The position numbers and the translations under genes are program-made. Below are positions 4,323-55,586 of a DNA stretch of 64,000 nucleotides, piece after piece. Where the stretch lies: contig NW_025764935.1 in NCBI RefSeq assembly GCF_003918875.1, positions 248,001 to 312,000 on the forward strand, read 5' to 3'. The notes under the pieces are model-generated. The model ran no database searches. It was not told the DNA's origin and worked only from the letters and a program-made list of their open reading frames with translations. This DNA comes from Haliotis rubra. Lineage: Eukaryota. The number at the start of each line of letters is the position of its first letter. The stretch's first letter is position 1.

Positions 4323-7300
4323 CTTATCCTGACTCATACTGTTTGCTTGAAACTGTCGGTAGGTGGTTGGCAGCCACTTATTATTTACTTCATTTACTGT
4401 TCATATAACCCCTAGGGAACTTCCAATCCTTTTGAAGATTCAAAGATTTCATGGATTGTAAGACTTGCATAGAATGATTCTTGCTTGTCTTAAGATGATC
4501 CAAGTGTTAAGAATAGGTCATTAACTTAACTAAATCATACTCAAGCTCTGAATCACAAAGTCAAACAGGCCTATGGACTCTGACAGGAGCCTGACTTTTA
4601 AGAGTCTATGTGATTGTGGGTGAGCATTATCTTGAAGGAACTGTTGTGCTACATCTTAAGGTCCAAATAAATGAATACCAGCAACATCTTCTGTAGCAAA
4701 ATCTCCTGAGATAATTCAGGGATTGCAATTTTCTGCTGATCCATGGATTTCCGCAGATTTTAATTCAAATTGTTCAATTGTGAATCGTCTAAATCCATTG
4801 AGAAACCCTCAACTCGATGACATAATATTAAGTTACCAGCTGAAAATAGATTTTCCTGTTGCCATCCCTGATAATTGTCAGCAAAAACAGTATCTGATTT
4901 ACAAAGACATCCTTCCATGATCATGGATGTGATCAATCAGTTGCAATGATGTAGTTGTTCCAGATATGTTGGATTTAGAGGTTTTTCATCTTGTTTACAT
5001 AGTACATCACATTCTTGAAAATATTTCTGCAAGAGGATATTCCAAGAATTGTATATTTTAGAACAGTATCTTTTTTTTTTCATTTTATGATACTTTGCCA
5101 TTTTTTTGAAGGCTACATCCTTAATCTAAATTAATGTATCAATAGAAGGTCCTCATTTTCTGCAGTATTTAACTGGAACATCAATCACTTTTCTTTAAGT
5201 TAACAACACTATTTCCAAATGTAGCAACATTATTGGCAAATAGAAGAATGGACAATGCATTTACAGCACAGTCAATAGAAGCTCCACTGAAATCATTCTT
5301 TACAATGTCTTCAACAAGTACATCAATGATGTACAGAATGAACCTTCCCCTGGGAAACTTTGGCTGGGGGTGGGGGGAGGTTTAGCCTAGACCAAACTTT
5401 CCCTGGGGTAGGAATATCCTATGACAAAACAGTGAAAAGTTAGGCCTAGGCCAGATTCTCCCCAAGGAAAGTTTAGACCAGGGAAGAAATGGCCTGCTAC
5501 ACCTGCAAGGTACCTTCTTTGCCTTTATTAAAGGGCAAGTTTACACAAAAATTAACCTTTTTTGTCTTGCACTTTTTCATCATAAAAAGTGTTTGTCAAG
5601 TAGTTTTATAGCCAAAACAGTACAAATATCAGAAGTAACTAATTTATTTTTTGTGTTATTTCGATTCACAATTTCCACATTAACCAAGAGTTCTATGTCT
5701 ACAATGAACACATCATGGCTAATGTACCTTGGAAATGTCATTGGTGCCCAATTGATAAATGAATGACGTTGTTAGACCTTATTAGACCCATTTCACATGG
5801 TGCAGGTATAGGTGTGGTTCTTGTGTCTGGATGTGCAGGCTCTTGTTTTAATCCACCTGTTGCCTGGCCGTCGGCTGGCTATGTGGTCAGATCCACACTG
5901 TGATGTTGCAATTTGAATAAACATATACATTGTACAAAAGTACCACATAACCAAATTGTATAACATTCAACCTGAATCGGTCATCTTTCCAACAGTATCT
6001 TCTTTCATCAGAACTAAATCGTATATGCACTACATCTAGCTAGCCATCAGTGAATGTGCCAGCATTCTATGTTTGGTACTTAATTCCCACAAATTGTACA
6101 ATATATGCCACTCCCCTTCAACCCTCACTGTCGAAACCATATTCAAATGCATCATGAAGGTAAATGCAATTTGCAGTTTTGAATTCTGTTTGAGATTCGT
6201 TTTTCTATATCTGCCGCTCATTGCAGGGCAAATTTACTGAAAATTACTTGCATCGTAACTCTCGCCAGTTTTGGCACATTACTGAATTACCATAATTTTG
6301 CATTTTGAATAATTTATAGTATGTCTTAATCTAAATGTTGAATTTTACTGGGACAATTGAATTAAAGAAACCCAACCCAAATCATTGTGATCAATACGCA
6401 AACAGGAACGGTGAAGTGAACTTTCTGCCAGAGTGTCATGTCACAAATATGTTGGTTATTTTTTCCCCATTACATCACAACTATAATTATTCAAAACCAA
6501 CCTCGTTACATGATTTTCTGAATTCCTCATAGTTAAAAATAAAATGACAAATAGTCTTTGTCACCAATACCAAGTGTCTCGGTGAAATCTAGCTAAATAT
6601 ATCAAATGCTGCTTTGGGAAAGGACCGCTTGTTTAAAATGTAAACAAAGCCAATCTCAGATTTCGACACTGTATACTGTCATACTGTGAGAGAGCCTTTC
6701 GCCTGCATGTTGCATACATTTGCTCATAAGTTTTAGAACATGCGTGGGAAGAGTATCATAGCAAGAGATGATAAAATATATAGGTGTATTCCGATTCAAC
6801 ACAATATATTATAGTTTCCGTAAGCGTCACGCCATTACTGACGCAAACTCGCGAGTAACGATGATGGTTCTTCTCATTTCTGACTATTGCCCTTGGTCGC
6901 AATGGAAACAAGCAGATTGTCAGAATGTTTTGGACTATTTACATGTCATGTTTATGCATATACGTTGGTGGAAAGAATGAAAATTTTCTTCCAAATATCC
7001 TGCATACTCCTGTTGGTGAATACACCATTTTGGGAAAGTTGCTTGGCGATAGTGATGTCATGCGTACGTCAACATTGTTATACATATTTGGTATTTTCAT
7101 TGAGGTAAGGTTATGAATGAAAATACACAATCATTTCTATCTTACTGCATACATGTTCAGTTGTAATGCTGCTTTTGTATTCTTATATACTTTTATCACA
7201 TGATTAATATCCGTATTATCTTTTGCTTTGGGACTAGACAAGTGACAGGTCTAAATCAATTGGCACCAATTACGTCATTTATATCAAAGGGTGGCAACTG

Positions 7301-8899
7301 TGGCAAACAAAGGCCTCATTATGGCATAACATTTCAGCACTTTTATTGAGGGTTCTACTTTTTATTGTAAGAAAATGAGTATATTTTCAAACATTGATAT
7401 TAACTAATAAATCAAACAAATAAATCATGTTTATTCTTGAGTGAAAAAAAATGGAATTTTTTAATTCCATTTTGTTTCACTCAAGAATAAACATGATTTA
7501 TTTGTGACCACTTCCCCTTTAACAACAAAGAGGGATCTTCTTTCTATCTTTGTCGCAGGCATTTTTAAAATCAATGAAAACTCCAAACATTGTTCAGGCA
7601 TCTTCTTTATATACGTATCTGATCCGTTATGCTGTAGTCTTTCCTGCACCTGGATTGAGATTAAAAAACATTCAAGAAAAGACCAAGGACGTCAAATTTG
7701 CAATTAAACATTGCTAGAAAAGATTATTTACCTATTCAGTTCTAATTTGTTTTTGCTAGGCATTGTCTTATATGCAGGGATTAAGATTAACATGTGTAAT
7801 TGTCTCGTATACAGCGCCGGAAATAGCAATCAGCTGTGCAGTGCACACGTTCCCCTACCTGTGACTTAGTTAAACTGTACCCAATAATATACCGAGATAA
7901 ATTCTGATGCAGTGATCTTGAAAATATAGTATCTGAAACTATTGTTTTATAAAGAGAAATATATTCTAGTACTGTCATTTTCATTGCAGGTTGTGCTCTA
8001 TAAATGTAAAATATTTATAATCATAACTAAGGTTATGCGACAGCGTTTTGGTGTATTGCCGGATAGTTTTTATGCATGGAACAATTTAACCTGTCACCGA
8101 TGAGGTTTCGCGCGATCTCGCTATTTCCACTGCGAAAGTAGTTTGTTGACATGTGATCGTCCAGGTACACTAATTATGACTTTTGGCGAAACAAAATCTA
8201 TGTGTATCCATTTACTGTTAACATCACTTCATTTCGAGACGTTAGAAGACGCAATATGTTAGTGATTGCTGTGAAGTAAGTACATTGTGTTAAGGAATTA
8301 CCGGTAGGCGAACATCTTGACTTCTTGATCACGTCATTTACATGGACCCTGAATAATTGCTTAAAAAAATGAGAGATGTCATTACGCCTGGAAAGCTTTG
8401 CACCTGCAGGGATCGAAATTCCCCTTATTTGCGTGCCGACGGCACGGGTAAATTGAAAATGGCACAGAAACAATTACTTCAACTTACCGTCTTGATTTTT
8501 TTAATAAAACTGACAAAATGTTTACTTTTTGACATTCTGACTACCAAAACGTATCCCAAATTGAAACCTTTCAACGTCTGTTATTTGTCATTCTCATGGG
8601 CGCCGCCATTTTGGTTTCAATTGGGCATGACAGGAGGTAACATGACGTCCTTCTTTGCATTCTGGGACAGGATGTTTACACCATGCGAAGATCTAGCTAA
8701 AATGTCCCAGAAGAAATACAAAACAATTTTTAAATTTCTTCAAACCCAGACAGGCCAAAATAAATGAAACCTCTGAAAGTGTTAACAGGCCTTCAACAGA
8801 GCCGACATGCACTGGTAGTAAGTGTAACTTATCTGCCACTACTGAAACTGAAACTGCTGATAGCGATGCTGAATGTGTCCAAACATGTATGACCGAAGA

Positions 8900-10760
8900 A
8901 GCCTAATCACTTTGTGACAGATTCACGAGGATTTAGAACAAGTAAACTGGAAAACCATGTGGCAAATGAACACATACTTGCACTTAGCGCCCAGTATGCT
9001 TCAGAAATTAAACCAGGCCAGTCAGAAATTGAAATTGAAAAGGGGATGATAAATCTTAATGAAAGAGACAGCAAAATAAAGCAAACTATTTGTAACTGCT
9101 TTCCACCTTGCACAACATGAAATGCCCTTTACAGAGTTTGTTGAACTTTTGAGACTTCAGACCGTGAATTTTGATGTAGATCTTATGAAAACTATTGTAA
9201 CGATAAACAGGCAAGAACATTTGTGAAGTTTATTGCACAAGACATTACAGACACAATTATGAATGATGTGAAAGGGGGCTGCTTTACAATTTTGTGTGAT
9301 GGTAGTACTGACAGTTCAGTGACTGAAGAGGAAATAATATATTTGAGATACATTGAGCAGGTTGAATGTAAACCAGTTACAAAGTTCTTGTGTGTTTTGG
9401 GGTTAGATGCCGCATGGGTATATGAAGCTATTGACAAAGCTTTGACAGAGATTGGAGATTTTCCTAACTGGAAAGACAAAGTTGTCTCTATTACGTCAGA
9501 CGGAGCACCAGTAATGATGGGCAGAAAAGGAGGGGTGGCGGCAAAATTAAGAAATGATGTCCCACATGTGATACCCATTCCATGTATCGCACACAGATTG
9601 GAGCTGGCCATGAAGAATGCTGGGATAGATCTGTCCTTGTTGAGTTCTCTTGACAAGCTCATGGAGGACGTCTAAAAGTTCTACCATTATTCTCCACTAA
9701 ACTGGACTGGACTACAGGAAACAGGAGAAGCCCTTAGCATTAAGGTGGTTAGGCCAGTGAACATATATGGTACAAGGTGGACAGGGCATAGACACAGAGC
9801 CCTGATGGCACTGAACACTGACTATATAGCTATCTACACACACTGTACTCAAATGAGCATGACCAACAGAGGTGACTCCAGAGCCAAAGCAAGGCACATA
9901 TTGGATCTTTCGAAGTCACTAGAGTTTGTCCTATTCATGCACTTGATGCTGTTTTACTTTGCAGCATGTGCCATGTTATCAGATGTTTTCCAGGACAATG
10001 ACACCTCCATTGATCTCATCCCAGTCAGGATTCATGCTGCCTGTGCCAAGATGACAGAAATTGATATGGATAAGATGGCTGTAGATTTTCTCAATGAGGA
10101 GGTAGTTGATAGTAAATACAAAACTGTACAACATGAAAAGAAAAGAGGGGCTGTTCCACTGAAGCTACTGTCATAAAAAAAGTCAAGACAGAGTTCAAAA
10201 CACTAACCAAAAACACAGCTGAAGCCTTGTATGGTAAGATTGCAGAGTTTGAAGGCAATAGTGGTGTGATGGAGGCCTTCCACATCTTCACTCCTGTAAG
10301 TTGGCCACAATATAAAGATTGTTTTGCTTCTTTTGGTAAGGAAGAAATAAAACAAATCACAAACCACTTCACAGAATACCTCAAGAAAAATGATATCTCC
10401 AAGGAGTCATGCCTCACTGAAATTCCAGATGTTCTCATGGGATGCCTCAGATCTCTTCAAGAGAACTCCAGACATTTCCTACATAGATCTTTGGTCTAAA
10501 GTGATGAGACAAGACAAAATGTACAAGAGGTACAGTAACATACTGTCCCTTGTACAGATATCTCTTGTTCTAGCTGTGTCCTCTGCTGAGTGTGACAGAG
10601 CTCACCCATGATTAGCATAGTAAAAACAGACTTGAGATCCAGGTTGAAGCCCCCACCCTCTCTCAACTCATGACAGTTGCCCAGTGCCAGACCCCACTTG
10701 CTGACTACAACCCCAGAGGGGCTATAGCAAGATAGATTGGGGTGGGGGTGGGTTAAAGGT
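8900..10760 (+). pseudogene. Decayed hAT transposase, ZNF862-like
   Basis: ORF fragments in order: LENHVANEH, ILCDGSTDSS, TSDGAPVMMGRKGGVAAKL, CIAHRLELA, GTRW, LAVSSAECDR (hATC dimerisation motif); several stops and frameshifts. Confidence 0.88.
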
Positions 10761-15809: not shown

Positions 15810-15965
15810 GGGGTGGTGGGGTAGCCTAGTGGTTAAAGCATTGGCTCATCATGCCGAAGACCTGGGTTTGATTCCCCACATGGGTACAACATGTGAAGCC
15901 TATTTCTGGTGTCCCTGCCATGAAATTACTGGAATATTGCTAAAAGTGTGGTAAAAGTAAACTCC
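15810..15965 (+). mobile_element. tRNA-derived SINE family B, diverged copy
   Basis: A box TAGCCTAGTGG, degenerate B box GTTTGATTCC, tail CTGGAATATTGCTAAAAG; homologous to 16939 and 31285 copies. Confidence 0.85.
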
Positions 15966-15998
15966 CTGTTATTTGTGATGACCTTTCCCATGATCATG

Positions 15999-16098
15999 AA
16001 CCGCCTCCGTGGTGTAGTGGTTAGAGCGTCCACCCGGAGAGTGGAAGGACGCGGGTTTCGATCCCTGACTGCATCATACCAAAAGACGTTAAAATATT
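15999..16098 (+). mobile_element. tRNA-derived SINE family C, 5' half (split by pogo insertion)
   Basis: Matches the 5' ~100 nt of the intact minus-strand copy at 53531-53877; continues at 19221. Confidence 0.85.
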
Positions 16099-16678
16099 GC
16101 ATAATAAAACATCCAATATAAATTGTTGGCTTACTGTGTTTATCTGTTTTAAACACGTGTTTGTTTTGTTTTGTTCTGTTTTTGCCAGCTTGGGTTATCT
16201 TTGTAAAAGCGTGTTCTTTGCCACGGGCAGTTCAAGATACCTTAAACTTGTTTATTTTGAGAGCAGATTTCTGATTGGCTAATGATAAAATGAAAGGCCA
16301 ATCAACAGAAGCCTTACATAACCGGTTAAGCGATCGCTTCCAAGAAAGGTTGTGTTTGTGTGAAATGAACAGTTTCATAATTCCTTATGAAAAAAGACAG
16401 TCGACGACGTTGCTTTCTATAATTTATATCAGACAGTTCACTCTTCGTGATAAAAAAGCATTGAAGAAACAAATATAAAATAACAATTGCATACACATAT
16501 CACCATTGAGTGGAGGGATGTATAAAATATCGCATACATGTATTATGTTGAGGGTAGGGATATCTCAAATATTATTTCAGCAGCTAATGTTCATTGTGGT
16601 TTTATGGATTTTTTTTCACAAGTCGGCTTCTGTGAACCCATCAAACTCAGTGTCCGACTCCTCCCCTGCGAGTGCTTG

Positions 16679-18150
16679 CTAGGCCAGCTCATCTATGTTG
16701 TCGTCGTAATAGTCGTCAAGGTGTGTGTCGTCGTTGTGTTCTTCACTTTCAATGTCATCATGGGAGGTTGATCCGATGAGGAGTTCATCATCTTCACCGC
16801 CGTCTATGGCGTTGGATATACTGCACTTTAGGAAGCTTCGTCTGACCATATCCACCGGAATAGCATCCCACGAGTCACGCAGCCACGTAGCGACTGTAGG
16901 GAGGGGCGCACGTCGCATGGCGTTGTTCTTAGTGAACGGGGCTGTGGGGTAGCCTAGTGGTTAAAGCGTTGGCTCGTCACGCCGAAGACCCGGGTTCGAT
17001 TCCCCACATGGGCACAATGTGTTAAGCCCATTTCTGGTGTCCCCCGCCGTGATATTGCTGGAATATTGCTAAAAGCGGCGTAAAACTAAACTCAGTCAGT
17101 CAGTCAGTCTTAGTGAACGTATGTTCACCATTCACCATCCACTTGGACCACTGTTGTCGCACTCTGTTTGAATGGCTTGTTCAGGGAGACATCCAGGGGC
17201 TGTAGGAGTGACGTGCACCCACCGTGGATGACTACTTGTCTTGTCCTGTTTTCCCTTAGTCTCTTCTTCATGCCCTCACACAGATGTGCTCGAAACATGT
17301 CCCATACAAGGAGAGACTGACAACCTCTGGCACCTCCCGGTCTAGCCATCCACACGTCCGACAGCCAGCGCAGCACCAGTGTCTCATCCATCCACCCCTT
17401 GGGATGTACAGCGATGATGACATCCGGAGGAAACTTCTCTTTAGGCATCGTCTTCCTCTTGAAAATAACCATCCGCGTCAACTTCTTTCCATCGGCGGTA
17501 CATGACAGTACGACGGTGAAGTGGGCTTTCTCTGCTCTGGTCGTCTTCACGGTGATGGTTGATGACCCCTTGGTGTGAATGGTCCTATTCCCTGGCATGT
17601 CGAATGTGAGGGGAGTCTCGTCCATGTTGCCTATTTGTGACAGCTCGAAGTCAATGGCCTTCCTCTCTTTCAAAATGAACGCGTGGAAAAGGTCCACCTT
17701 CGTGTCCACCTCCTGTGGTAGTTTCTGTGCGATGTGTGTCTTTTGTCTGAGAGCAAGGTTGTGTCTTCTTAAAAATCGAGTACACCATGTAGAGGACGCC
17801 TTGAAATTCTCAGGAAGGTTCAGCTCTTTCCTCTTCTTCCGGTAAGTCTGGAGTGCATGATGACGTATCATCATACGTGTGACGACAAACCCGCTCTGCC
17901 TCTGCGACATCACCCACTCTTCTACTACCTTTTCTAACTCGACGAACAGGGTTTTCAGTCCTCGTCTGGCCTTCTTCGTTTTCGGCATCTGAAGAAGAGC
18001 GTCCTTCATCTTCCTCCAGTCACGTACTTGCTTCTCATTGACTGAGCAACTCCATGCAGCCGAACAGTTGCTGTTCTTCTCTGCGAAGGCGATCACTTGC
18101 AACTTGAAGGAGGCTTCATATGCGTGTCATTTGCGTTTGATATCCATGAC
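16679..18150 (-). pseudogene. pogo transposase (BrkDBD/CENP-B HTH + DDE_1), disrupted by SINE and frameshift
   Basis: 325-aa ORF with IGNMDETPL, HPKGWMDE, LLVWDMFRAH, LQPLDVSLNKPFK; C-terminus (WLRDSWDAIP..SFLKCSISNAIDGGEDD) resumes beyond the SINE at 16939-17107. Confidence 0.92.
16939..17107 (+). mobile_element. tRNA-derived SINE family B, young copy
   Basis: Intact A box and B box (GGTTCGATTCC), (CAGT)n tail, perfect 12-bp TSD TCTTAGTGAACG (16927-16938 / 17108-17119). Confidence 0.95.
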
Positions 18151-19220
18151 GAATGAAGATTTTGAATGTAAATGTATGTTTTATACTTTCAAGTTATTCC
18201 AGTGGAAATTATTAAACTAGCTTATACATCCCTAATCCGTATCTGCTGAGACGGATATATACAGTATCATTACTGTTGCGTGTTGAGATAAACATTAACT
18301 AAATGTTAAAAAACACAACAAAGCGAATACCATTACCGATTACGTAAATTTATCCGTAGTTAGATCCTTTGAAGGGGCGTAAAAACAAACTGGTGAGCTT
18401 GCAGGTGTGTACCTCGTGTATATTGCTATGGTTGACTTGTTCTTAGAAATCACACCATTGTAAGTAATTAATGTCACTGCATTCAAGAATTAGGTAATAT
18501 CTCCAAAGTGTATATTGTGTATAATGCCGGCGAACGGGCAGTTCAAGATGCCTTAAACTTGTTTATTTTGAGAGCAGATTTCTGATTGGCTAATGATAAA
18601 ATGAAAGGCCAATCAACAGAAGCCTTACATAACCGGTTAAGCGATCGCTTCCGAACGCTACTGTCCTGGTTCATTTACCGAGACTGATCGAGTGACACAG
18701 ATATTTGACTTCAATGTAATTTCTTGATTAATATCATCTGTAGTACCGCATTTATTAAATCATTAACAGTATTTTTCAAAACCACCACACAAAACTGCCA
18801 CAGAATACAAATAAGTTTACTTTACGTGAAACAAGTCGTGTCAAGTCATGTCACGTGGCCCAACTTTATCGCTCGATAACAAAGTACCGGTAAGTACATA
18901 GCTGTGATCAAAATATCTGATTAAATTTAATTTATTGTTTATACTATGAAATATATTTTACAAAAGACAAACAACAAAGTTTTATATTTTATGTTTTGTT
19001 TGTCCCACGATGTCATTTACCTTTGGAAACGTTGTCAGTACGTATATGCTTCCTGCTTCAGGTGTAAACATTGCCAGTTGAGTTCGCAGGGCTGGCAGAT
19101 TCACACACCTGACCTCTGGAATTTTTTGGGTAGATTAATGAACTCAAGTATAAGTCAGGTCTGATTTTTTACCTACATTTTCTGGTATCAAATTTCCGAC
19201 TTATAGTCAGTCATATACGG

Positions 19221-19597
19221 TACTTGTTGAACCCTGCCTGGCGCTTTGCATTAATGATTACAACAAGGACTGGTCGGCTTGGAGTCAGTATAATGTGTCT
19301 GAGTGGGGTATTCATGCTTCACTGCGGCATGGTATCTCAGTGAGCTAGCCCTATAAAACCAGCTTAAGTCTGGGCTAGTACAAGCAGCTGCACATACACA
19401 TACACACGCATGCACGTCATCATATGAGCGAAATATTCTCAAGCACGACATAAAACCCTATTTCACCTCACACATTCAATTTTGTTGCATATTTATGAAT
19501 GAAATATGATTCTTTCAAGAGTAAACATTATCATTGCTATAATTGTGTTAATAATCGGGAAAACCTTGAACTTGTCACTACCACATTTATCTAAATC
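19221..19597 (+). mobile_element. SINE family C 3' half plus 124-bp transduced flank
   Basis: Colinear with reverse complement of ~53407-53778; TGATCATG at 15991-15998 and 19598-19605 brackets the whole insertion. Confidence 0.85.
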
Positions 19598-20267
19598 TGA
19601 TCATGTTCATGGGTGTTTATTTCTTCAGCCTCCCTTAACAGACAAAGCACTTTGTTGTATTTTAAAATGTCCATATTTAACATGACTCTTCTCTGAGACA
19701 TTCAAAATGTTTTGGTTTTGACTACTGATTTACACTAATGAATAAAGATTGTAGTTTGGGTCCAAAGATTGGGTTTAACTTTCCATAATGTAACACCTTG
19801 TGCAAAGTTCAATTTCATTGCCAGGTCATCATCAGCATCAAAGAGTACTTTCTTCAGATGATTACACTAATGAAAGTATTTCATATCCAAATATCTAAAT
19901 TGCATCAGGTTAAGTATTAAGTGTTTTCCTTCAAATTACAACCAGTACTTGATGCACTCACCGATGAGACAACCACTCTCATTGAATGTACAATTTTGTC
20001 TTGGCCCACAATATATGCTCTTTCATGGTGAACCTGATAACCTGAAACTGGCCCCCTGTTTTTCCTCTGTAATTTGTACTTTTGATATCATGTAATGACT
20101 TGAAATTTGTTCACACATGCATATTTTCCATGATTCACTTTATCAGATCGTATTTTCAAGTTTTTGAACTATTATTTTGCGGAATGACAATTCCTTTTGA
20201 AACAAAATTATGAAATATGTTTTGGGTATAGCAATCCACAACATGCTTTACTTAATAACACATTGTG

Positions 20268-26075: not shown

Positions 26076-26944
26076 AGTCAAAACTCTTTCAATAATCGTA
26101 AGTCTCTGATATAATGATAGTCTTTCAATAATCATAAGCAGGGCTTTGTAGAATTAACATAACTGTTTATGAATCACTATCAAATAGAATGCAGCAAGCT
26201 TAAGCTCCACAGATTGCAGAAAATAAGTTAACATGGATACTTGAAAAATGACACTGATACTTTTACAGTCTTCAAATGGTTAAATCAGCTTTACTTGGTA
26301 ACTCAGTACTCATTGACACTGAAGTACCCAGAGTTGACATGCTTGTCTCAATATTACAGTCTTTTTGACTCTACGGTACCAACAGAAGTTGTACAACTAT
26401 AATTGGTTTTGCATGCATGATGACACGTCATCAAAAACTGACTTCAGTTATAATAAAATGGTCTATAATATAGAGTCTAAAGTGATGGCTTAGGGATGCA
26501 ATAATCAGATTTTCCTTTTTCAAGTAACTTAGGAGTACAAATAATTATTTTCTTTTGTGCACATCTACTGTTCTCATCAGTTCATATGAAACTAGGTTTG
26601 TGATCAGTGGAATAAAATTAGTAGTGAGAATAGCGGTCACCTATTAATGTTAGTTTGAAGTTCCAGCTTCAAAGTAGTTTTCTGGCAGGATGGTGACTTG
26701 TGATGACTAGTCTTTCTGGAAGATTACTGGTCATGAGATAGATGGCTGATAGCTATTTTGAATGCTTTTTTTCTTTCTCTCGACAACATGGCAGTGCTCT
26801 TGGTTTTCACTGAAGTGTTAAATGCCACATTTATTTTCTTCAGTAAAGGCTGACGAATGGCAATATGAATAAAATACTGTCAAAGTGGTGGTGAATCCAC
26901 CTCACTGTGAGAACCAGAGGTTGACCTCATGTCTCAGAAGACCA

Positions 26945-27440
26945 GTGACTGCAGGCCCACACCATATCCCGGTGACTGCAAGCCCACACCATAACCCTGA
27001 CATCATATCCCGGTGACTGCAAGCCCACACCATAACCCTGACACCATATCCCGGTGACTGCAAGCCCACACCATAACCCTGACATCATATCCCGGTGACT
27101 GCAAGCCCACACCATAACCCTGACATCATGACTGCAAGCCCACACCATATCCCCGGTGACTGCAAGCCCACACCATAACCCTGACATCATATCCCGGTGA
27201 CTGCAAGCCCACACCATAACCCTGACACCATATCCCGGTGACTGCAAGCCCACACCATAACCCTGACATCATATCCCGGTGACTGCAAGCCCACACCATA
27301 ACCCCACACCATAACCCTGACACCATATCCCGGTGACTGCAAGCCCACACCATAACCCTGACACATCATATCCCGGTGACTGCAAGCCCACACCATAACC
27401 CTGACACCATATCCCGGTGACTGCGGCCCACACCATAACC
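26945..27440. repeat. 41-bp minisatellite, ~12 units
   Basis: Unit CCGGTGACTGCAAGCCCACACCATAACCCTGACAYCATATC head-to-tail with no spacers; explains the repetitive ORFs. Confidence 0.95.
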
Positions 27441-28622
27441 CAATCCACTGTCCTCATAAAGCAATTACAAAGACTGATGATTATCATAATTGATTTACTA
27501 ATTTCTGCTAATGTTATGGGTAAATATTTTCCAAGTAAGAGAATGTTCACATGTCTCAATAGAAATCAAAGAACTCTTAATAGAAGTGAAGCACACATAA
27601 AATATGAATCAATAATGTCAGTTGTCATAGATTAAGCCTGATATGTTTCACGAGAAGTGAAGCCCTTGTGCTATACTGATGCATCTCTCATAATTCCAGG
27701 ACCATTGACAATTTCACCATGTCACCTGGAGGAAGACATGCAGTATCTTTTTCTCATCCTTTCCTCAGAATGAACCAAATCAAACAATCCACTGTTTCTG
27801 GTAACCATATTTCTTCATGCTTTTACATTGTCAAACTCTAGTATGATCTGATGTCATGATTCCATCCCATGGTTGACCTGTGTTCCTGGTGTTGCTTATT
27901 GTAATGACAGTATACTTCTTTCAGGTTGAAAATATTGCATTTATCCAATCGATCATCTCAATGTCATCCTGATATCATAAAAATCAAAACATTTCCTGTG
28001 GCATATAATTTGTTTTGAGTTTAATAAAGTGGAAAGTGACAGCCATTCTCCTGTAAACTGCACTTTACCTTCATCTCACCATCCATAACTGTATTGCATG
28101 TGCATGAGGAAAACAAATAAACATCCCTCACAGTTTTGAACACTTGCCAACAATTCATATTGTTCTTTTATGTATGTTAGTTTTATCCATCTGCCCATCC
28201 TGTCCTTCAGGAGTGGAGTATGCAGATGAGCAACAAACTTAATACTGCAACTGGCCATCTGGAGATACCGGTACTGGGATAAATGATGGTTCTGTCATTG
28301 GAAGGCGGGCCACCAATTCTAGCCTGTCACAAACTTGTACTCCTGAAAGGAAGAACTGTTTCAGAAATATTTGACATCGAATAAATTACATGCTGTTGAG
28401 GTGTATTGATGGATGCTGGATGTTGTGTATAGGTTATAAAAACTGATTTTGTGGTAGGGAAGATCCCTGGCCATCTGACAACATTTGTGAAATGTCCACT
28501 GGGAAAACTGGTGACAAAGGAGACAGGTTTATTTTTTTACAAACCTGTTATATAGCCTATTCAAAAGTTGAACCCTTGATCGTTTCATGTTTCTGTTGTT
28601 GAAAGTTCATCACATCTATAAA

Positions 28623-31284: not shown

Positions 31285-31450
31285 GGGGCGGTGGGGTAGC
31301 CGAGTGGTTAAAGCGTCCGCTCATCACACCGAAGACCCGGGTTCGAATCCCCACATGGGTAAAATGTGTGAAGCCCATTTCAGGTGTGCCCCGCCGTGAT
31401 GTTGCTGGAATATTGCTAAAAGTGGCATAAAACTAAACTCAGTCAGTCAG
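31285..31450 (+). mobile_element. tRNA-derived SINE family B
   Basis: A/B boxes intact; perfect 14-bp TSD TCTTGATCAGAATG (31271-31284 / 31451-31464). Confidence 0.95.
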
Positions 31451-31898
31451 TCTTGATCAGAATGAAAGTGTCACAGGAATTGTGCTCTGGCTGATGAGTG
31501 TTCTGATATCTTGGCCTGTGAATTATAACAAATCAAATGTTGTATGGAGAATGTCTGTGTATTATCAATGCATATGTTGATAGGAAATTAGTTCAGAAGG
31601 AAGAATAATATGTTCAGTTGAAACTTGCACTAAATATGCAATAACTAACAGAAATAAGTTGATGGGTAATTCCAATTCTGCTGTAAGTCGTGTCCAGCAA
31701 GAAGGTGTATGTACTTGCAGCTATAAATACAGGTCCAATGGAATACCAGACTGCCAAACAGAAATAGACAGCCTTTGGACATTGTTATGTATTCACTTAG
31801 GACGATTACTGTGTATGTTCTCCAACGAAATAGCGATCACCTTGCATGCTTTTCTTACTAATAAATTTGTCAAGACATACTTAGTAAATATAGTTTAA

Positions 31899-33311
31899 CC
31901 CATTCAACACCGCAGGCCGCTTAAGCGGCCACAACGTTATGAGTCCCTAGACAGAGGCCGATTAAGCGGCCAGGCAGTAGTCACGTCAAAATGAGACATA
32001 ATTTTAGGAACCTACCTGACTTATGATACATATATTAAATCTATCACATTTCACAATGTCTGAAAACACTTATTAAATTTCAATTTATCATATATTATCA
32101 GCAGAATTAAAATTATAAACTATTTTTCGCAATGTTATTGAAAACAATGATTCTCGGACACATGCTTCGGCAGCGGGTCTACAATAACATTGTCAAAGAG
32201 CAAAGTAACGATGTTTCGAGGAATTCATTAAATAAATTGAATAAACTAATGAATAAAATCAACAACAACATTCATAAAAGTTGTCAAACGTACATATAAA
32301 ATTACTATTTCCATCTTTTTGTGCGATCATGTAATGTAAGTCAAGTCACTGACGAGTGACATCTCGGCTCTCGCCTCCTCAATCTTCACGCTTGGACACG
32401 ATGTTTAATGCGAAAATATATGCATGAAGCATTTTTGTCACAGGTCATAACCTAGCACGATACGTCCAATAAGTTCAATAATTTACGTATAGGTAGCGAT
32501 TTCTTGCTTAATATGTTCAGAATAGCATTATTTTACCCAAAACATTTGTCTAAATCTAAAAGTTTTCGCTCACGAGGACGGTATCCATTGCCGTAATATG
32601 ATTGGCTGCTTTAGGTCACGTGTGTGATTTTGACCAATCACGACCCTTATAGCAGACTGTGGCGAAAAAGCGTCATTAGAAACCAATCTTTATCCAATAA
32701 AATCGCTTCTTACAAATGTGAAAATACTCTTGGCAAGGGTACAGTGATATTGTTGATGTTCAGAGCTTTCGAACGATGCCTGACATCAAACGATTCGCCT
32801 CGCACGTTATTCATACAAAGCTTCGAAAACAGAGGTATTTTCCGTTGTTATGTCATGTTACCGAGCGGAAAGCCACAGATATCGTGAAATAGGCGACCAT
32901 ACATATTATTTGAGAAATCTTTTTATAATAATTTTCTGATTACGTAAAAATGAAAATATAAAAGAAAAAGGCACGGGCATGTTATGACATGTCACAAATG
33001 GAAAAAAAATCGCCATAGTTTTTGCTTCTTTCGTGGTTTATCTGGACATTATAAATGTAAACTGGCATTTTCATTCAAAAATAAATTTATTTAAGTTTTA
33101 GTTGTATTATTTGAATAATATTATAAATATAAACTTCATATTTATCAACAGTAGGATTAGATCTTTTAAATGGTGTATGGGATGTAGTAGCAATAACGTT
33201 TTACAAGCTTATAATTTCCTTCATAAACATAGGCTTCATCTATGACCTCAGAGTCTCTGGGAACTCGGTGTCATGGCAGGAAATGCCTCTGGTTGACTGG
33301 TGTTGAAAGAG
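31899..33311 (+). mobile_element. Non-autonomous piggyBac-type element, copy 1
   Basis: TTAA|CCCATTCAACACC ... GGTGTTGAAAGAG|TTAA; 13-bp imperfect TIR; subterminal palindrome GGCCGCTTAAGCGGCC; no transposase. Confidence 0.88.
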
Positions 33312-34629
33312 TTAAAACATTTTGAACCACACAATTAAAATACTTTAAAAACATAAGCCCAGATATACAGTTAAAACTTTTTATAAGCAGACGGTGTAAT
33401 TACATAATTAGATTTCACATTGAAGTTAGGATTTGGACATGCTATTTCCAGTGTTTCAAGCACATGGTAGTAACTGTCCACTGGGGGATAAAATATCAAA
33501 ATTGATTACTGTCTACAAAGGACACCAACTCTACAGATGTGTTTGGGGGAAAAAAGGAGCTCAATACAAAAAGTACAGTAATCAATTAAGGCTATGAATG
33601 TCATGACATTTAACAAAAATGTCAGTGATCTCATGTATTGTGGACCGGAGAACTGAGCAAAACCCAACAAAAACAGTGCACCAAAATGCATCCAAGGACC
33701 TGTGAAATGACAATATTAAATTTCATGTACACAATGAACATTACACATGATTCTTGTGTTTTTAAGACATGTGTTATCAGGTAGCAGCATGGGCTTATGT
33801 TAGCCCCATTGTGGGAATTTTTATTTAAAACTTTGTGTTGAAAGCAACTTAGTTTATTAGGAATGGAAGTTCACATTTAAAAATGGACTTGAGCCACAAA
33901 GGTCGGTAAAAGTGTTGAAATGGTAAATTGTGTAGTTTCAGGAGCGACATTTAATGTTTGGACTTGTTTCAGCTCTGTTTTGATAAACGGGGTTATGTTC
34001 TTCTCCATACTTCTAATGATGTTTGCTTTCATTTTACTGATCCCGGTTGTCTTTAAGGAACACAAGACACTAAAGATTGTAAATTCAGGTCCAAGATTTG
34101 TCCAAATTTTGTGTGTTTCCGTATCATTAATATCATATATTAGGAATAAAAATTGTATTATGCGAGCCTTTGGCGAGATTATTCCTAATTTATATGACGA
34201 GAATCGAGCATTCGCGTAAGAATACTTAGCGGTACACCAAGGTGAAGGTCGTTCATGACAGTGGCATATGGTTGTGACTTGTCGCTAATACATGTGCAAA
34301 TATGTGCAAACATAACTCATGCTTAAAATAAGATCTTTTTTGTCTAAAAAAACCCCAACAAAATTGGGCAGGGTTTTCTTGGGAGTGTTTCTATTTTCAC
34401 TGTGGGTAATCACCTCATCAATATCAGTTTCTGATACCTGCATGATGGAATCGATTCGTCGTCTGTATTGTGTTCGATAGATCGAAATCCTTGGTTGGTA
34501 CCTTTCTTAGACTCTTGCCTTTCAGTCATGCCTCACAATCAGTACCTTCAATTTGAACGAAAGTACTCCGTTTCATGTTTTCCGAAGTCAATTACTGCAG
34601 TAACGACTCCAGAACCTCTCATCAATTTG

Positions 34630-36490: not shown

Positions 36491-37116
36491 GATTGATGGA
36501 TGGTGATTTTGAGTTCTTGAGTGTTTCAAGTTAGAACTTTTAGAATGAAGATGGTAACGATGTGATACTTGAGATGCATGGAGTGATGGGTCAGAAAGAG
36601 ATTATTTGTCAAATCCTCTTGTACTTTTCTTTTAAATATGAGTTAAATAATACGAAAATGTTTTACGCTAAATGCAATAATTTTTACAGATTTTCATGAA
36701 TACTTTTTGACACTGATTTCCGTGCTCTCATATAAAGTAAAAGAAAAAGGAAATATATTTAAGAAGTACAGTTCGCTCTACCCCCATATAGTGTAATAAA
36801 GTACACTTTTGCCCTAAACTATTATAGTTAAAGTACAAGGACGCTTGCTTGCTTCCTTTCTGCACTGTGTAAGTTCTTTTTGCATGTTCTTTTGGAGAAT
36901 GTAGGCTATCTGATGTCTTAAATAGTCAACATTGTTTTAGCTCTGTTTCAATATTAGCAATGAATGTATCATTGTTGGGGCGGGAAGTTTCAACCCAGAG
37001 AGAGCGGTGTCTTCTTTGGAGAGGTGCTTGCCACTGAGGTTGATGAGTTCTCTAGAAGTGTTCGTCTCTGGATTGGGACTTTGGGTACTGTTGGTCTGAG
37101 CTTGTTAAATTTTTAA

Positions 37117-38532
37117 CTCTTTCAACACCAGTCAACCAGAGGCATTTCCTGCCATGACACCGAGTTCCCAGAGACTCTGAGGTCATAGATGAAGCCTATG
37201 TTTATGAAGGAAATTATAAGCTTGTAAAACGTTATTGCTACTACATCCCATACACCATTTAAAAGATCTAATCCTACTGTTGATAAATATGAAGTTTATA
37301 TTTATAATATTATTCAAATAATACAACTAAAACTTAAATAAATTTATTTTTGAATGAAAATGCCAGTTTACATTTATAATGTCCAGATAAACCACGAAAG
37401 AAGCAAAAACTATGGCGATTTTTTTTCCATTTGTGACATATCATAACATGCCCGTGCCTTTTTCTTTTATATTTTCATTTTTACGTAATCAGAAAATTAT
37501 TATAAAAAGATTTCTTAAATAATATGTATGGTCGCCTATTTCCCTATATCAGTGGCTTTTCGCTCGGTAACGTGACACAACAACGGAAAATACCTCTGTT
37601 TTCGAAGCTTTGTATGAATAACATGTGAGGCGAATCGTTTGATGTCAGGCATCTTTCGAAAGCTCTGAACATCAACAATATCACTGTACCCTTGCCAAGA
37701 GTATTTTCACATTTGTAAGAAGCGATTTTATTGGATAAAGATTGGTTTCTAATGACGCTTTTTCGCCACAGTCTGCTATAAGGGTCGTGATTGGTCAAAA
37801 TCACACACGTGACCTAAAGCAGCCAATCATATTACGGCAATGGATACCGTCCTCGTAAGCGAAAACCTTTAGATTTAGACAAAAGTTTTGGGTAAAATAA
37901 TGCTATTCTGAACATATTAAGCAAGACATCGCTACCTATACGTAAATTATGGGATTTATTTAACGTATCATGCTAGGTTATGACCTGTGACAAAAATGCT
38001 TCATGCATATATTTTCGCATTAATCATCGTGTCTGAGCGTGAAGATTGAGGCAGCGAGAGCCGAGATGTCACTTGTCAGTAACTTGACTTGCATTACATG
38101 ATCGCACAAAAAGATGGAAATAGTAATTTTATATGTACGTTTGACAACTTTTATGAATGTTGTTGTTGATTTTATTCATTAGTTTATTCAATTTATTTAA
38201 TGATTTCCTCGAAACATCATTACTTTGCTCTTTGACAATGTTATTGTAGACCCGCTGCCGAAGCATGTGTCCGGGAATCGTTGCTTTTAATAACATTGCG
38301 AAAAATAGGTTATAATTTTAATTCTGCCGATAATACATGATAAATTGAAATTTAATAAGTGTTTTCAGACATTGTGAAATGTGATAGATTTAATATATGA
38401 ATCATAAGTCAGGTAGGTTCCTAAAATTATGTCTCATTTTGACGTGACTACTGCTTGGCCGATTAATTGGCCTCCGGCGTCTAGGGACTTATAAAGTTGT
38501 GGCCGCTTAAGCGGCCTGCGGTGTTGAATGGG
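37117..38532 (-). mobile_element. Non-autonomous piggyBac-type element, copy 2 (inverted)
   Basis: Reverse complement of 31899-33311; TTAA at 37113-37116 and 38533-38536. Confidence 0.88.
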
Positions 38533-38949
38533 TTAATGTGGATCTTTGTTTGAACACGAACCATCAAGTATATTGTCTGTAATTATTAGTAAACTGTCTG
38601 TGTTACAGACTCCCTAAGATAAAAAAAATAATAACGAAGGGAGGTAATCCTTACCTAGATAACACTATAGCTAAGTGCAACTTTCCACCACCAAAAAGGG
38701 ATTTTCTGGTGAGATAGAATGATTGTAGGGAATGATGGAGTAATCTAGATTACTGTTAATTAATCAATATATCAAGATTTTAGTATTTAGTGATGTCACT
38801 ATCGTTCTTAATGACGTCACTAAGTGATTTTATGACGTCACTTCCGGTTGATTTGGTTTAATTAGATAATTGTCAGCTTTTCATCATCATTCCCATCACA
38901 TAAACGTGGTATTGTGTGAAGTATAAGAGGCAAGAATTTGATCCATCAC

Positions 38950-50600: not shown

Positions 50601-53530
50601 TATTGCTATAAATAATGTGTATTTATTGAATTCATGAAAGATTGAGAACAGAAGTAACAGGGGTGTTTATTCAACAGACTATTGCTTTAGTCAGCTATGT
50701 ACGGATTACAAAGCATTGTTCTCGTACCAAGTTGATTGTCAGGTCTGTTACTTTAGTCCATAATCCGTAATTGAGATAGTCCGGATTATAATGCAAGCAT
50801 TAATGATAAATTAAGAACAAATTTGTATCCTAAGTTTCCTTTGAGTAGCCAAATAAATTGTACTCACCTCACTAAAACTCAATTGGGTATTTTGCCGTTT
50901 TCCATTAATTTTTAAAATATAAAAAAGTTTAAATGTCAGTGTTTGTTATTTATATTTGATCTGTAATATGAGAAACGATAAGAAAGACTGCAAGTTGTGA
51001 AGTTCATGTCCTGGAATAGAACCTCTCAATATACCTCAGTTTTTTTATCTATCCACCGGTACGCAAGCTAAGATTTGACATTCTCGTGTGTACGCATGTA
51101 AGATCACATTTATTGAGTATTTACCCAAATTCAAGCGTACTTGTACGTAACAAACATAATAGGAATTGAGTTTCTGACTCTTCATAGTAGTGTGTTAGTT
51201 CGGAAAATATCTCTGTGGCTAAGTGTTCTTTCATGACACTTTGCAAACACAGACCAAGTTGTCATCTTCTGATGAATCTTGTTGACAGTTTTTCCTGAAC
51301 ATCTGAAGATAGATAAAAAACTGTGCCTGTGGACACCATGTTTAATAGCCGAAGCCCCCATGAATCAGGAAAAGAATGTTTCCATTCATTTTTGAAATCT
51401 CATTGTAATGTACATTGTTGAAATATCCGATGTTTTGACAGATTTGAATGTCACTCTTTTCTAAGTTAGAAAATAGTCTTTCAAACCTTTTGAGTGTTTG
51501 TGAATACAAATTGTGTTTATTCTACCAGTTTCAAATTCTTTCTGTGAATGTAAAGAATGTTTTCCCTTGATTGTATTTCAAGTTCTTTGATCAAGCAGTT
51601 AATGAATTGGTATGTTTTAAGCCTTGCCAATGAAATCTTACAAATTTTCCATCTATAGCAGCCAGACTTCACGTTACTGCTGGCAGGGACAGAGTGGGTT
51701 TACTTGAAGTCTGTTTGAGGTTGCCATTAAAAGTACAATCTTATATCCATGGGCTAATTTTTAGCTCGCATGACAGAATGTCAAGCAAGTTTGTCATGTC
51801 ATCCATCAGTTCCAAACTTTTAGATATCTTCTGACACTACAGGTTGAAACTACATTAAGTTGGAATCCTGCTCCCAGAATTGACTTTCAACATGACAATT
51901 CAGGTTCTACATTTTCATTGGCTTAACATAACCATGTTTTTTTGGTCATTAAGGTTCAAATTTTGATGTTTTTCAACCAATCTCACTGATCAGCTAAGTG
52001 TTACAATTTGTTTCAAAACCTGTATTTATTTTGGCTGTATAATGGATATTTTGTGGTATTACCTGGCAAGCTACAATTGCTAATGGCCGTCCATTCTGTC
52101 GCCAGTGAAATTTACAGTAGAATTGTACTGCTAATGATTATTGACACGTCATCTTCATGACCTTATCACTCTGACTTGTTAACATTACTCTATCCAGGAT
52201 TTGTTATAATATCCCACATTTCCTGTTTATTGGACTCCAAGTGTTGGGTAATGACTTGGAACCTTCTTGTCACTTTAGCCTAAGTACTTTAGCTTAAGGA
52301 AAAAGCACTGATGCATCCTGGGAATGATGAGTGGTGTACAGATGCCTCCAAGAGCAATGTCTGAACCCCTAAAAGCCTCTGAAAATCCATCCTTCAGACT
52401 CTATGAACACATTTCAGGGAACGGTACTTTTCAACTAGGGCTTTTTGTCCCATTAAATACAAATACTAAAAGCCAAAGTCACTGCAGTGAATACTGATTG
52501 GGAAGTTGAAGGGAAATAGTGGTTTAGGCCTCGACGTAGGATTACGATTTAAAGTTGCCTACAGATTTATGCTTAATGGAATGGTGTTGATGTTTGTTGA
52601 TCAAAGGACTGGACTGGCCAATTGATTTGTTTTAAATCCATCCCAGTATTCTTGTCAGTGTAGATGAAAGAAATAAACCTGGTCTTGTTGGGTTGTAATT
52701 CTCAAGACTGTCTACCTTGCAATTCATTTTCAGTTTGAGATTGTTGAATGCTAGATAAATGTTGATGTGAAGTTAAAGAAGCCTGCTGAGTACATGTATG
52801 GTTATATTAAATGTTCTGCTGTCCAACTTGCAGTTTCAGTCAAGGCAAGCATCTTCTGTATTTCTTTCTTCTCTCTTTTTTTTTTTTACATATGTCAAAT
52901 ATATTGCATCAGTAGCTATCGATGTGGTTCTCTTTTGAATGAAGTGTGAGATTTCAGTAGAAATTACAATTTGCGTTACATTATCTATATGACAATGGTC
53001 CATTAAGATGAAATACTGATTTTAGACAATCTTCATTGTATTAGGTGTGTCGTGTCATACATAACAGTTCTTTTTTTAGAAATCGTTTCTGTAATGCATT
53101 GCTTTTGTATTGTACATTTTGTACTCGGTTGATGTTATTTCCGAAAGTTTCTAAGTGTGGAGATTCTCGTTGTCATACTTGTGAAAGTATGATTGAGGGA
53201 AGTTTTGTTAACATTACACCCAGTGAGACATTTGTTGTTCAACAAAAAGTGAATTGTGACACTAGAGATGTTATTTATGTCATTACATGTTCTTGATGTA
53301 ACGAGAAGTATATAGGGAAAACAGAACAAATTAAAAAGAATGAACCTGCATCAATCCCACATTAATCACCCCCCAAAACGCACTATAACTATTCCTCTCA
53401 GTGAACATTTAGATAAATGTGGTAGTGACAAGTTCAAGGTTTTCCCGATTATAAACACAATTATAGCATGATAATGTTTTACTCTTGAAAGAACCATATT
53501 TCATTCATAAATATGCAACAAAATTGAATG

Positions 53531-53877
53531 TGTGAGGTGAAATAGGGTTTTATGTCGTGCTTGAGAATATTACGCTCATATGACGACGTGCATGCGTATG
53601 TGTATGTGCGGCTGCTTGTACTAGCCCAGACTTAGCTGGTTTTATAGTGCTAGCCCACTGAGATACCATGCGGCAGTGAAGCATTAGTACCTCACTCAGA
53701 CACAGTATACTGACTCCGAGCCGACCAGTCCTTGTTGTTCCCTTTAATGCCGAGCACCAGGCAGGGACCAACAAGTACCATATTTTAATGTCTTTTGGTA
53801 TGACGCGGTCGGGGATCGAACCCGCGACCTTCCGCTCTCCGGCGGACGCTCTAACCACTACACCACGGAGGCGGTCC
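53531..53877 (-). mobile_element. tRNA-derived SINE family C, intact copy (central domain resembles Meta/RUDI-type SINEs)
   Basis: A box TAGTGGTTAG, B box GGTTCGATCC, CATACCAAAAGACATTAAAATATGGTAC..CCCTGCCTGG domain; 12-bp TSD CAAAATTGAATG (53519-53530 / 53878-53889). Confidence 0.92.
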
Positions 53878-54039
53878 CAAAATTGAATGGCAACACATGA
53901 TTGTGTGTACATGATACAATGCTATTGTTGCTGTATGATTGTGTGTACATGATACAATGCTATTGTTGCTATATGATTGAGACATCATACGTGACTGTGC
54001 AATGTCGTATTGCTTTAGAGTGTCAGTTACTGCATTAAA

Positions 54040-54087
54040 TGGCCTGAAGAAGCAGGTACCGAATGTACTTGCTGAAAACGTTTGCCA
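54040..54087 (+). ncRNA. Minimal type I hammerhead ribozyme (Penelope pLTR type)
   Basis: Stem I UGGC/GCCA, core CUGAAGA, 9-bp stem II AGCAGGUAC/GUACUUGCU, GAAA, palindromic stem III AACGUU, predicted cleavage after U54083. Confidence 0.8.
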
Positions 54088-54157
54088 AACTTATTTCATC
54101 TTCATCTTCTATACATGTGACCATAGAGTGTGAACATTTCGTGTGATATTTCTTATA

Positions 54158-55480: not shown

Positions 55481-55586
55481 AAGTTTAATAAGTTAGTAGG
55501 CTGGACAACATATAATGACGGCAAAATAATTGTGTGTGTGTGGTGAAACTAATATTTATATTTTCCTATTATCTGAATCCTAATTA

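What the first reader, a model, noticed from the sequence alone, without database searches (positions are those of the whole stretch)
15991..19605. Apparent SINE 3' transduction with its source element 34 kb away
Seen: the family C copy split across 15999-16098 and 19221-19472 continues for 124 bp (19473-19596). That stretch matches the sequence directly downstream of the intact copy at 53531-53877 (reverse complement of 53407-53530, Penelope DNA including one TSD of that copy). Homology starts exactly at the SINE 5' end, upstream flanks are unrelated, and TGATCATG brackets the whole unit. Inference: a read-through transcript of the 53.5-kb copy (past a T4 run) was retrotransposed locally. This would identify a source element and show a SINE moving Penelope sequence.
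Basis: partly seen in the sequence, partly recalled or inferred. Interest (0 to 1): 0.78.

Follow-up and report, generated by a model that had tools for sequence, protein, structure and literature searches.

The report
SINE copy patched from its neighbour
One copy of a short mobile element really does carry 124 bases taken from the DNA beside a second copy 34 kb away, but the two element bodies are not parent and daughter, so this looks like a local DNA-repair patch that mimics a 3' transduction, not an RNA-borne one.

Summary
Copy A (15999-16098 + 19221-19472, split by a 3.1-kb insert) runs on for 124 bp (19473-19596). That stretch equals the 3' flank of copy B (reverse complement of 53407-53530), including B's own 12-bp target-site duplication. 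Genome-wide, the SINE-flank junction exists only at A, at B and at B's allele on a haplotig. B is a true insertion into a 5'-truncated Penelope-like fragment, and paralogous fragments show the empty site.

The SINE bodies of A and B differ at 33 events in 313 nt and share no derived variant. The last 166 nt differ at only 2-4 (p about 0.001). The four shared derived variants all lie in the last 25 nt of the SINE. A is therefore a mosaic of an old, independent SINE body and a young B-derived tract (from 19432-19459 to 19596). The donor lies 34 kb away in cis, the tail ends at no terminator and carries no family tail repeat, and the 8-bp duplication is shorter than the family's usual 11-14 bp.

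I favour DNA-level templated repair or partial ectopic gene conversion running out into B's flank (about 0.55). The rivals are a reverse-transcriptase template-switch chimera (0.15) and plain 3' transduction (0.12). Other first readers of this scan flagged similar 'local' SINE transductions elsewhere in this genome; none has been checked.

The parts
15991..15998 (+). Upstream copy of the 8-bp direct repeat TGATCATG flanking unit A
   Evidence: shorter than the 11-14 bp duplications of most other family copies
15999..16098 (+). SINE copy A, 5' part (tRNA-like head), old body
   Evidence: many private CpG and non-CpG changes
16099..19220 (.). 3.1-kb insert splitting SINE A. It holds a pogo/Tc5-like DDE transposase remnant (17125-18102, minus strand) and another SINE (16938-17105). 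No clean terminal inverted repeats were found.
19221..19431 (+). SINE copy A, middle part; belongs to the old body and is not B-like (last A/B difference at 19431)
19432..19472 (+). SINE 3' end of A that is B-like. The switch point lies between 19432 and 19459. The rare T at 19459 and the terminal ...CACCTCACA are shared with B.
   Evidence: T variant in 22 copies against 3947 with A
19473..19484 (+). Copy of B's downstream target-site duplication CATTCAATTTTG
19485..19596 (+). Copy of B's 3' flank (antisense Penelope-like DNA). 2 differences from B's haplotig allele over the whole 124-bp tail and 4 from B.
19598..19605 (+). Downstream copy of TGATCATG, preceded by one unassigned C at 19597
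53407..53530 (-). Donor stretch: the 3' flank of SINE B, with B's downstream duplication at 53519-53530
53531..53877 (-). SINE copy B, intact, 5.1% from the family consensus; its private variants are not a subfamily
53878..53889 (-). B's upstream target-site duplication CATTCAATTTTG
53118..54143 (+). Host repeat of B: a 5'-truncated Penelope-like 3' fragment with a decayed GIY-YIG endonuclease domain at about 53150-53400. Paralogues start at variable points (53118-53340) and most reach about 54055-54143.

Best explanation
A and B are two independent, old insertions of the same tRNA-derived SINE family. They lie 34 kb apart in inverted orientation on one chromosome. Later a break or stalled fork arose in or just past the 3' end of SINE A. 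The broken 3' end paired with the homologous SINE B and was extended on B as template through B's last 14-41 nt, B's target-site duplication and 112 nt of B's Penelope-like flank. It then came off and was joined back to the other end by end-joining, 1 nt before what remained of A's own duplication. This is SDSA/MMBIR-type templated repair, that is, a partial ectopic gene conversion that overran the repeat. Shown: the mosaic structure, the donor locus, the uniqueness of the junction and the ages of the parts. Inferred: the break, the DNA rather than RNA template, and the trimming of A's original tail and part of its duplication.
For: (1) Sharp identity step. A against B shows 33 events in 313 nt of body and 4 in the last 166 nt (p=0.001). 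Against B's allele it is 24/237 against 2/166 (p=1.5e-4). (2) A's 20 and B's 16 body differences from consensus include none that is shared. All four shared derived sites lie in the last 25 nt of the SINE, and one of them is present in only 22 copies against 3947. (3) The body divergence (10.5%) is close to the sum of the two copies' distances from consensus (6.4% + 5.1%), as expected for independent insertions. (4) No other copy carries A's private variants; its best matches are 95-96%. They therefore arose in place, and A's body is older than its tail. (5) The donor lies 34 kb away in cis. Ectopic conversion between SINEs is distance-dependent and often partial, giving hybrids (PMC8230782). 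(6) A's flanking repeat is 8 bp against 11-14 bp for most family members, as expected if repair trimmed the downstream copy. (7) The tail ends at no T run and carries no (CCTCA)n tail.
Against: With non-CpG sites only, the divergence step is weaker (p 0.01 against B's allele, 0.08 against B). The model needs the right-hand junction to fall just at the start of A's old duplication so that 8 bp survive. There is no clear microhomology at that junction. No pre-patch allele (SINE A with a canonical tail) was seen in the assembly or in the public contigs. The maximum-likelihood tree cannot reject an A+B clade.
Confidence: 0.55

Rival explanations
1. Chimeric retrotransposition. Reverse transcription started on a transcript crossing locus B (antisense to the Penelope fragment), copied the 124-nt flank and the last 14-41 nt of SINE B, then switched to another family-C SINE RNA and finished at its 5' end. 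The hybrid cDNA was inserted with an 8-bp duplication.
For: This explains the mosaic, the exact SINE 5' end and a direct repeat bracketing the whole unit in one step.
Against: Landing 34 kb from the template locus in a 1.38-Gb genome has a chance of about 5e-5 under random insertion. A's body carries about 20 private changes that no scored copy shares (best matches 95-96%), so it looks much older than the tail, unless the second template was an old copy now missing. The duplication is short for the family. There are no tail repeats at the 3' end.
Confidence: 0.15
2. Plain 3' transduction. A Pol III read-through transcript of B ran past the T4 run and was retrotransposed whole soon after B inserted. 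All body differences arose afterwards.
For: Homology starts at the SINE 5' end, the tail contains B's duplication, TGATCATG brackets the unit, and the junction is unique to A and B. The tree does not reject an A+B clade.
Against: The divergence step between body and tail (p 0.001 to 1.5e-4 for all sites, 0.01-0.08 for non-CpG). B's lineage has 13 private changes in the body and none in 166 nt (binomial p=0.004). No shared derived body variant. The tail ends 31 nt before the next T4 and lacks the family's tail repeats. Source and daughter lie 34 kb apart. A survey of 118,489 AluY elements confirmed no Pol III SINE transduction (bioRxiv 10.1101/2024.04.29.591526).
Confidence: 0.12
3. Assembly artefact: a false join inside the SINE repeat.
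For: SINE copies are a classic place for mis-joins.
Against: Independent contigs from public runs of two samples bridge the tail into A's unique flank. About half of the contig depth over the tail shows the A-specific state without the extra A at 19522 (table 4). A false join would also need a second one outside any shared repeat.
Confidence: 0.03

Closest known systems
Partial ectopic gene conversion between dispersed SINEs (Alu-Alu hybrids; PMC8230782)
   Same: A resident SINE has part of its sequence overwritten from another copy, giving a hybrid with a sharp identity step. Neighbouring copies are favoured.
   Different: Here the tract does not stop inside the repeat. It overruns by 124 nt into the donor's unique flank and ends by non-homologous joining, so it adds foreign DNA and mimics a transduction. 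The distance (34 kb) is beyond the roughly 10-kb range that paper quotes for Alu.
Templated insertion at a break (SDSA with end-joining, or MMBIR/FoSTeS template switching); named from my own knowledge, not read here
   Same: A short (100-200 nt) stretch copied from a nearby ectopic template in inverted orientation, with one homologous and one non-homologous junction.
   Different: The priming homology is a SINE. The break itself and its cause are not observable.
3' transduction by L1 and SVA (Pol II read-through; described in PMC13141329 for canine L1)
   Same: Element plus downstream flank of a source copy, bracketed by a target-site duplication. The flank identifies the donor locus.
   Different: There is no poly(A), terminator or tail repeat at the end of the extra DNA. 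The element bodies are not parent and daughter. Donor and recipient are neighbours. For Pol III SINEs such events were sought and not confirmed in primates (bioRxiv 10.1101/2024.04.29.591526).

Membership tests
Retrotransposon 3' transduction | Extra DNA contiguous with the element's 3' end that matches the unique flank of one other copy | tested here: met
   a 124-bp tail equals B's flank including B's duplication; found only at A, B and B's allele
Retrotransposon 3' transduction | Target-site duplication brackets element plus transduced DNA | tested here: met
   TGATCATG at 15991-15998 and 19598-19605, but 8 bp against 11-14 bp for most family members
Retrotransposon 3' transduction | Element body of the daughter descends from the source (shared private variants; same divergence in body and tail) | tested here: not met
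   none of B's 16 body variants is shared; 10.5% against 1.2-2.4% divergence, p 0.001 to 1.5e-4; A's body is closer to at least 40 other copies
Retrotransposon 3' transduction | Transduced segment ends at a transcript 3' end signal (Pol III T run, poly(A) or the family's tail repeats) | tested here: not met
   the tail ends ...ATCTAAAT; the next T4 in B lies 31 nt further on; no (CCTCA)n
Retrotransposon 3' transduction | Empty site with a single copy of the duplication | not testable with these tools
   no second haplotype of locus A in the assembly; haplotig C2360 starts at window position 41.4 kb; the public contigs were uninformative
Ectopic gene conversion / templated repair between repeats | Mosaic recipient with a sharp identity step to a single donor | tested here: met
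   the switch lies between 19432 and 19459
Ectopic gene conversion / templated repair between repeats | Donor unchanged, homologous at the entry point and nearby in cis | tested here: met
   B is intact with both duplications inside its host repeat; 34 kb away on the same contig, inverted
Ectopic gene conversion / templated repair between repeats | Recipient existed before the event (pre-conversion allele or orthologue) | not testable with these tools
   indirect only: A's body has about 20 private changes and carries a 3.1-kb insert, whereas the tract has 2
tRNA-derived SINE family ('family C') | tRNA-like head, thousands of dispersed copies with duplications, and a common 3' end | tested here: met
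   a weak Rfam tRNA hit over B's head (20.4 bits); more than 5500 first-look candidates; 3947 exact 3'-end matches; duplications mostly 11-14 bp...CACCTCAC(CTCAC)n tail
Penelope-like element (host repeat of B) | C-terminal GIY-YIG endonuclease with an upstream Cys motif | tested here: met
   motif RCHTC...NCDT.NVIYVITCSGCNE.Y.GK; Atlas score 0.96 to GIY-YIG clusters, mostly eukaryotic, commonest phylum Mollusca; Pfam itself found nothing
Penelope-like element (host repeat of B) | Reverse transcriptase upstream; hammerhead ribozyme in terminal repeats | tested here: not met
   no RT-sized reading frames upstream of the endonuclease motif in the 3-kb loci held, by eye and not family-scanned; Pfam scans of the window flanks and the longest locus frames gave no RT. 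The copies are 5'-truncated, so the RT may simply be missing. No Rfam hammerhead.

The most novel reading that the evidence does not exclude
The unit is a true RNA-borne event: a Pol III (or host) read-through transcript of SINE B carrying antisense Penelope DNA was reverse-transcribed, with or without a template switch, and inserted nearby. That would be a documented SINE-mediated 3' transduction with its source identified, in an invertebrate. Together with the scan's other unchecked notes of local pairs, it would hint at locally biased retrotransposition.
Probability: 0.25. Interest if true: 0.6.

Novelty: new member of a known kind. Interest (0 to 1): 0.3.

Why it matters
Shared 3' flanks are used to trace active source elements. 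This case shows that a repair patch primed in a dispersed repeat can create the same signature (element + donor flank + bracketing repeat) without any RNA step. It can also move 124 nt of unrelated (Penelope-like) DNA. Any census of SINE transductions in this genome, including the other 'local source-daughter' notes of this scan, should first test body against tail divergence and the distance between partners. As a biological object it is an ordinary, neutral rearrangement in repeat-rich DNA.

Tried and rejected
(1) Composite subfamily: rejected. The junction is present only at A, B and B's allele.

(2) Third independent copy at C2360: rejected. It is collinear with window 41.4-63.8 kb, so it is a haplotig.

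(3) Tail ending at the natural end of the host repeat (tail capture): rejected. Paralogues run on about 290 bp further.

(4) B's odd variants as a subfamily signature: rejected. A 32-nt pattern with up to 2 mismatches finds only B, its allele and two partial sharers.

(5) Empty or pre-event allele: not found. No second haplotype of A exists in the assembly. Reads were available only as contigs and were swamped by repeat copies.

(6) Tree of family copies: star-like. A and B are apart in the free search, but a forced clade is not rejected (p-AU 0.66), so this is uninformative.

(7) Simple inversion by crossover between the inverted SINEs: rejected, because the tail is present at both loci.

(8) Host repeat as the end of a Tc1/mariner element (transposase next to it in L008/L009): rejected in favour of a Penelope-like 3' fragment once the GIY-YIG motif was read.

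(9) Hammerhead ribozyme in the host repeat: none.

(10) Terminal inverted repeats of the 3.1-kb insert: none clear.

Full report
**What is there**

Copy A of a tRNA-derived SINE occupies 15999-16098 and 19221-19472 on the plus strand. It is split by a 3.1-kb insert. The insert holds a pogo/Tc5-like transposase remnant (DDE_1 8e-18, HTH_Tnp_Tc5 1e-15) and another SINE.

Copy B is intact at 53531-53877 on the minus strand. A local alignment runs from the SINE 5' end through the SINE and on for 124 nt: 19473-19596 equals the reverse complement of 53407-53530 (window self-BLAST 92% over 383 bp, E 7e-155). TGATCATG lies at 15991-15998 and 19598-19605.

**B is the donor**

B is flanked by CATTCAATTTTG on both sides. 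Six paralogous copies of its host repeat read straight through a single copy of that 12-mer (...CATGTTTTGC-CATTCAATTTTG-GCGCATATTTATG...). B is therefore an ordinary insertion, and the 12-mer at 19473-19484 in A is a copy of B's downstream duplication.

A search of the 1.38-Gb assembly with 19440-19596 finds the SINE-flank junction at three places only:
- A itself;
- B;
- C2360:17187-17344, which lies on a contig collinear with window 41.4-63.8 kb at 94-98% identity and is thus the other haplotype of B, called B' below.

All other hits either start exactly at the junction (host-repeat copies without a SINE, at most 94% identical) or end there (canonical SINE copies). The junction is therefore not a composite subfamily.

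The host repeat runs on about 290 bp beyond 53407 in its paralogues. The tail does not end at a natural element end.

**Host repeat**

On the plus strand, 53150-53400 translates, with stops, to ...CGDSRCHTCESMIEGSF...NCDTRDVIYVITCS*CNEKYIGKT.... An intact paralogue gives ...RCHTC...NCDTRNVIYVITCSGCNENYTGK.... From my own knowledge this is the Cys-motif plus GIY-YIG pattern of Penelope-like endonucleases.

- The ESM Atlas places it at 0.96 with clusters carrying PF01541 GIY-YIG. They are mostly eukaryotic, and the commonest phylum is Mollusca.
- Pfam itself is silent.
- Paralogues start at variable points (53118-53340), and most reach about 54055-54143, as 5'-truncated retroelement copies do.
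- I saw no RT-sized reading frames upstream of the endonuclease motif in the loci held, Pfam scans gave no RT domain, and there is no hammerhead.

'Penelope DNA' is thus plausible. The tail is its antisense strand.

**The family**

There are more than 5500 first-look candidates and 3947 exact matches to a 20-mer of the 3' end. Canonical copies end ...AAAACCCAATTTCACCTCAC followed by CTCAC-type repeats. Their duplications are mostly 11-14 bp.

**A is a mosaic, not a daughter of B**

I aligned A, B and B' with 35 other copies.

| Region | A vs B | A vs B' |
|---|---|---|
| SINE body (A vs B: 313 nt; A vs B': 237 nt, because B' has a rearranged head) | 33 events | 24 events |
| Last 166 nt (41 nt of SINE + 124-nt tail) | 4 events | 2 events |
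| Fisher p, all sites | 0.001 | 1.5e-4 |
| Fisher p, non-CpG changes only | 0.08 | 0.01 |

Further points:
- A differs from the consensus at 20 body positions and B at 16, and none is shared. The only columns where A = B and both differ from consensus are four sites in the last 25 nt of the SINE.
- One of those four, the T at 19459, occurs in 22 copies against 3947 with A.
- B's lineage has 13 private changes in the body and none in the 166 nt (binomial p=0.004).
- B's variants are private and do not mark a subfamily.
- A's body finds at least 40 copies at 95-96% identity and none closer. B (about 89%) is not among them. A's private changes therefore arose in place.
- The A-B body distance (10.5%) is about the sum of their distances from consensus (6.4% + 5.1%), as expected for two independent insertions.
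- The B-like tract starts between 19432 and 19459 and ends at 19596. It is about as diverged from B and B' (1.2-2.4%) as the two B alleles are from each other (5 events in about 400 nt).
- A maximum-likelihood tree of the bodies is a star. It neither joins A with B nor rejects that grouping.

**Mechanism**

A plain read-through transduction requires three things: that all of B's body changes post-date the event while its tail stayed unchanged; that the RNA ended at ...ATCTAAAT, 31 nt before the next T4 and without the family's tail repeats; and that the daughter landed 34 kb from its source. My estimate for that last chance is about 5e-5 for a random site in 1.38 Gb.

A template-switch chimera removes the first difficulty but not the others. 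It also leaves A's body looking much older than its tail.

A DNA-level event accounts for all of it. A break arose at the 3' end of an old resident SINE A. The broken end invaded the nearby inverted SINE B. Synthesis ran through B's 3' end and 124 nt of its flank. End-joining then linked the new strand to the other end, trimming A's tail and the first bases of its downstream duplication, which would explain why 8 bp remain where the family shows 11-14.

Partial, distance-dependent gene conversion that yields hybrid SINEs is documented for Alu (PMC8230782). The unusual feature here is the overrun into the donor's flank. By contrast, a survey of 118,489 AluY elements confirmed no Pol III SINE transduction (bioRxiv 10.1101/2024.04.29.591526).

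Weak points of my reading:
- The non-CpG statistics are modest.
- The right junction has to fall conveniently close to the old duplication.
- No pre-patch allele was seen. The assembly has no second haplotype of A, and the public runs are available only as contigs, which were swamped by repeats. They do confirm the tail-to-flank junction in two samples.

**Context from the scan**

Four other first-reader notes in this genome claim SINE 3' transductions, two of them explicitly local. They are unchecked. If they are real, recurrent local pairs would themselves argue for a cis-acting DNA mechanism, because random retrotransposition cannot produce them at that rate.

**Verdict**

The donor locus and the Penelope-like nature of the tail are supported. 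The RNA transduction reading is not favoured.

| Explanation | Probability |
|---|---|
| Templated DNA repair / partial ectopic conversion overrunning into the flank | 0.55 |
| Reverse-transcriptase template-switch chimera | 0.15 |
| Plain 3' transduction | 0.12 |
| Assembly artefact | 0.03 |
| Unassigned | remainder |

The feature is a new example of a known kind of event. Its interest is modest, mainly as a caution for transduction-based source tracing.

Noticed in passing
window 41409-63831 vs G000:C2360:1-30823: A haplotig covers the right third of the window at 94-98% identity. It has large presence/absence differences (about 5.5 kb extra in C2360 at 4784-10300, near window 46.28 kb; about 5 kb against 1.8 kb between window 55277 and 57109).
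   Followed up: partly
G000:C2360:17614-17707 (allele of window 53832-53874): The B' allele of SINE B has a rearranged tRNA-like head: extra or replaced sequence of about 60 nt that does not align with B or the consensus.
   Followed up: no
window 17125-18102 (-): A 325-aa frame with DDE_1 and Tc5 HTH domains (pogo/Tigger-like transposase remnant) lies inside the 3.1-kb insert that splits SINE A. No terminal inverted repeats were found at the insert's ends, so the insert may be nested or degraded.
   Followed up: partly
window 56206-57054 (-): A 282-aa frame with Tc1/mariner-type HTH domains (HTH_23, HTH_Tnp_Tc3_2): a second DNA-transposon remnant about 2 kb from the B locus. Weak 70-nt inverted arms lie at 55550-55619 and 57075-57144.
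   Followed up: no
window 15810-15964, 16938-17105, 31285-31452: Three copies (84-91% identical) of another short repeat family with a tRNA-like head (Rfam tRNA 31.2 bits at 16943-17009). Contigs laid on it run on into CTCACTCACTCA-type tails. The first copy sits 35 bp upstream of SINE A.
   Followed up: no
window 53890-53980 (-): The Penelope-like 3' region next to B contains a tandem duplication of a unit of about 47 nt (ATCATA[TC]AGCAACAATAGCATTGTATCATGTACACACA...) that is single in paralogue L004.
   Followed up: no
window 31895-33322 vs 37107-38536: A 1.43-kb inverted repeat at 96.6% identity. The scan's other notes call it a piggyBac-type composite with possible arm-to-arm conversion.
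   Followed up: no
window 26942-27441: A block of tandem repeats (period roughly 90-180 nt, 83-94% identity between units).
   Followed up: no
L008 and L009 (G000:C118:8069-11164; G000:C81:292704-295799): Two loci on different contigs are near-identical over the stretches compared (same BLAST coordinates and identities against the window, shared reading frames). Each has a Penelope-like 3' fragment next to a Tc1-like transposase (HTH_38, DDE_3). They may be haplotigs or a recent segmental duplication.
   Followed up: no
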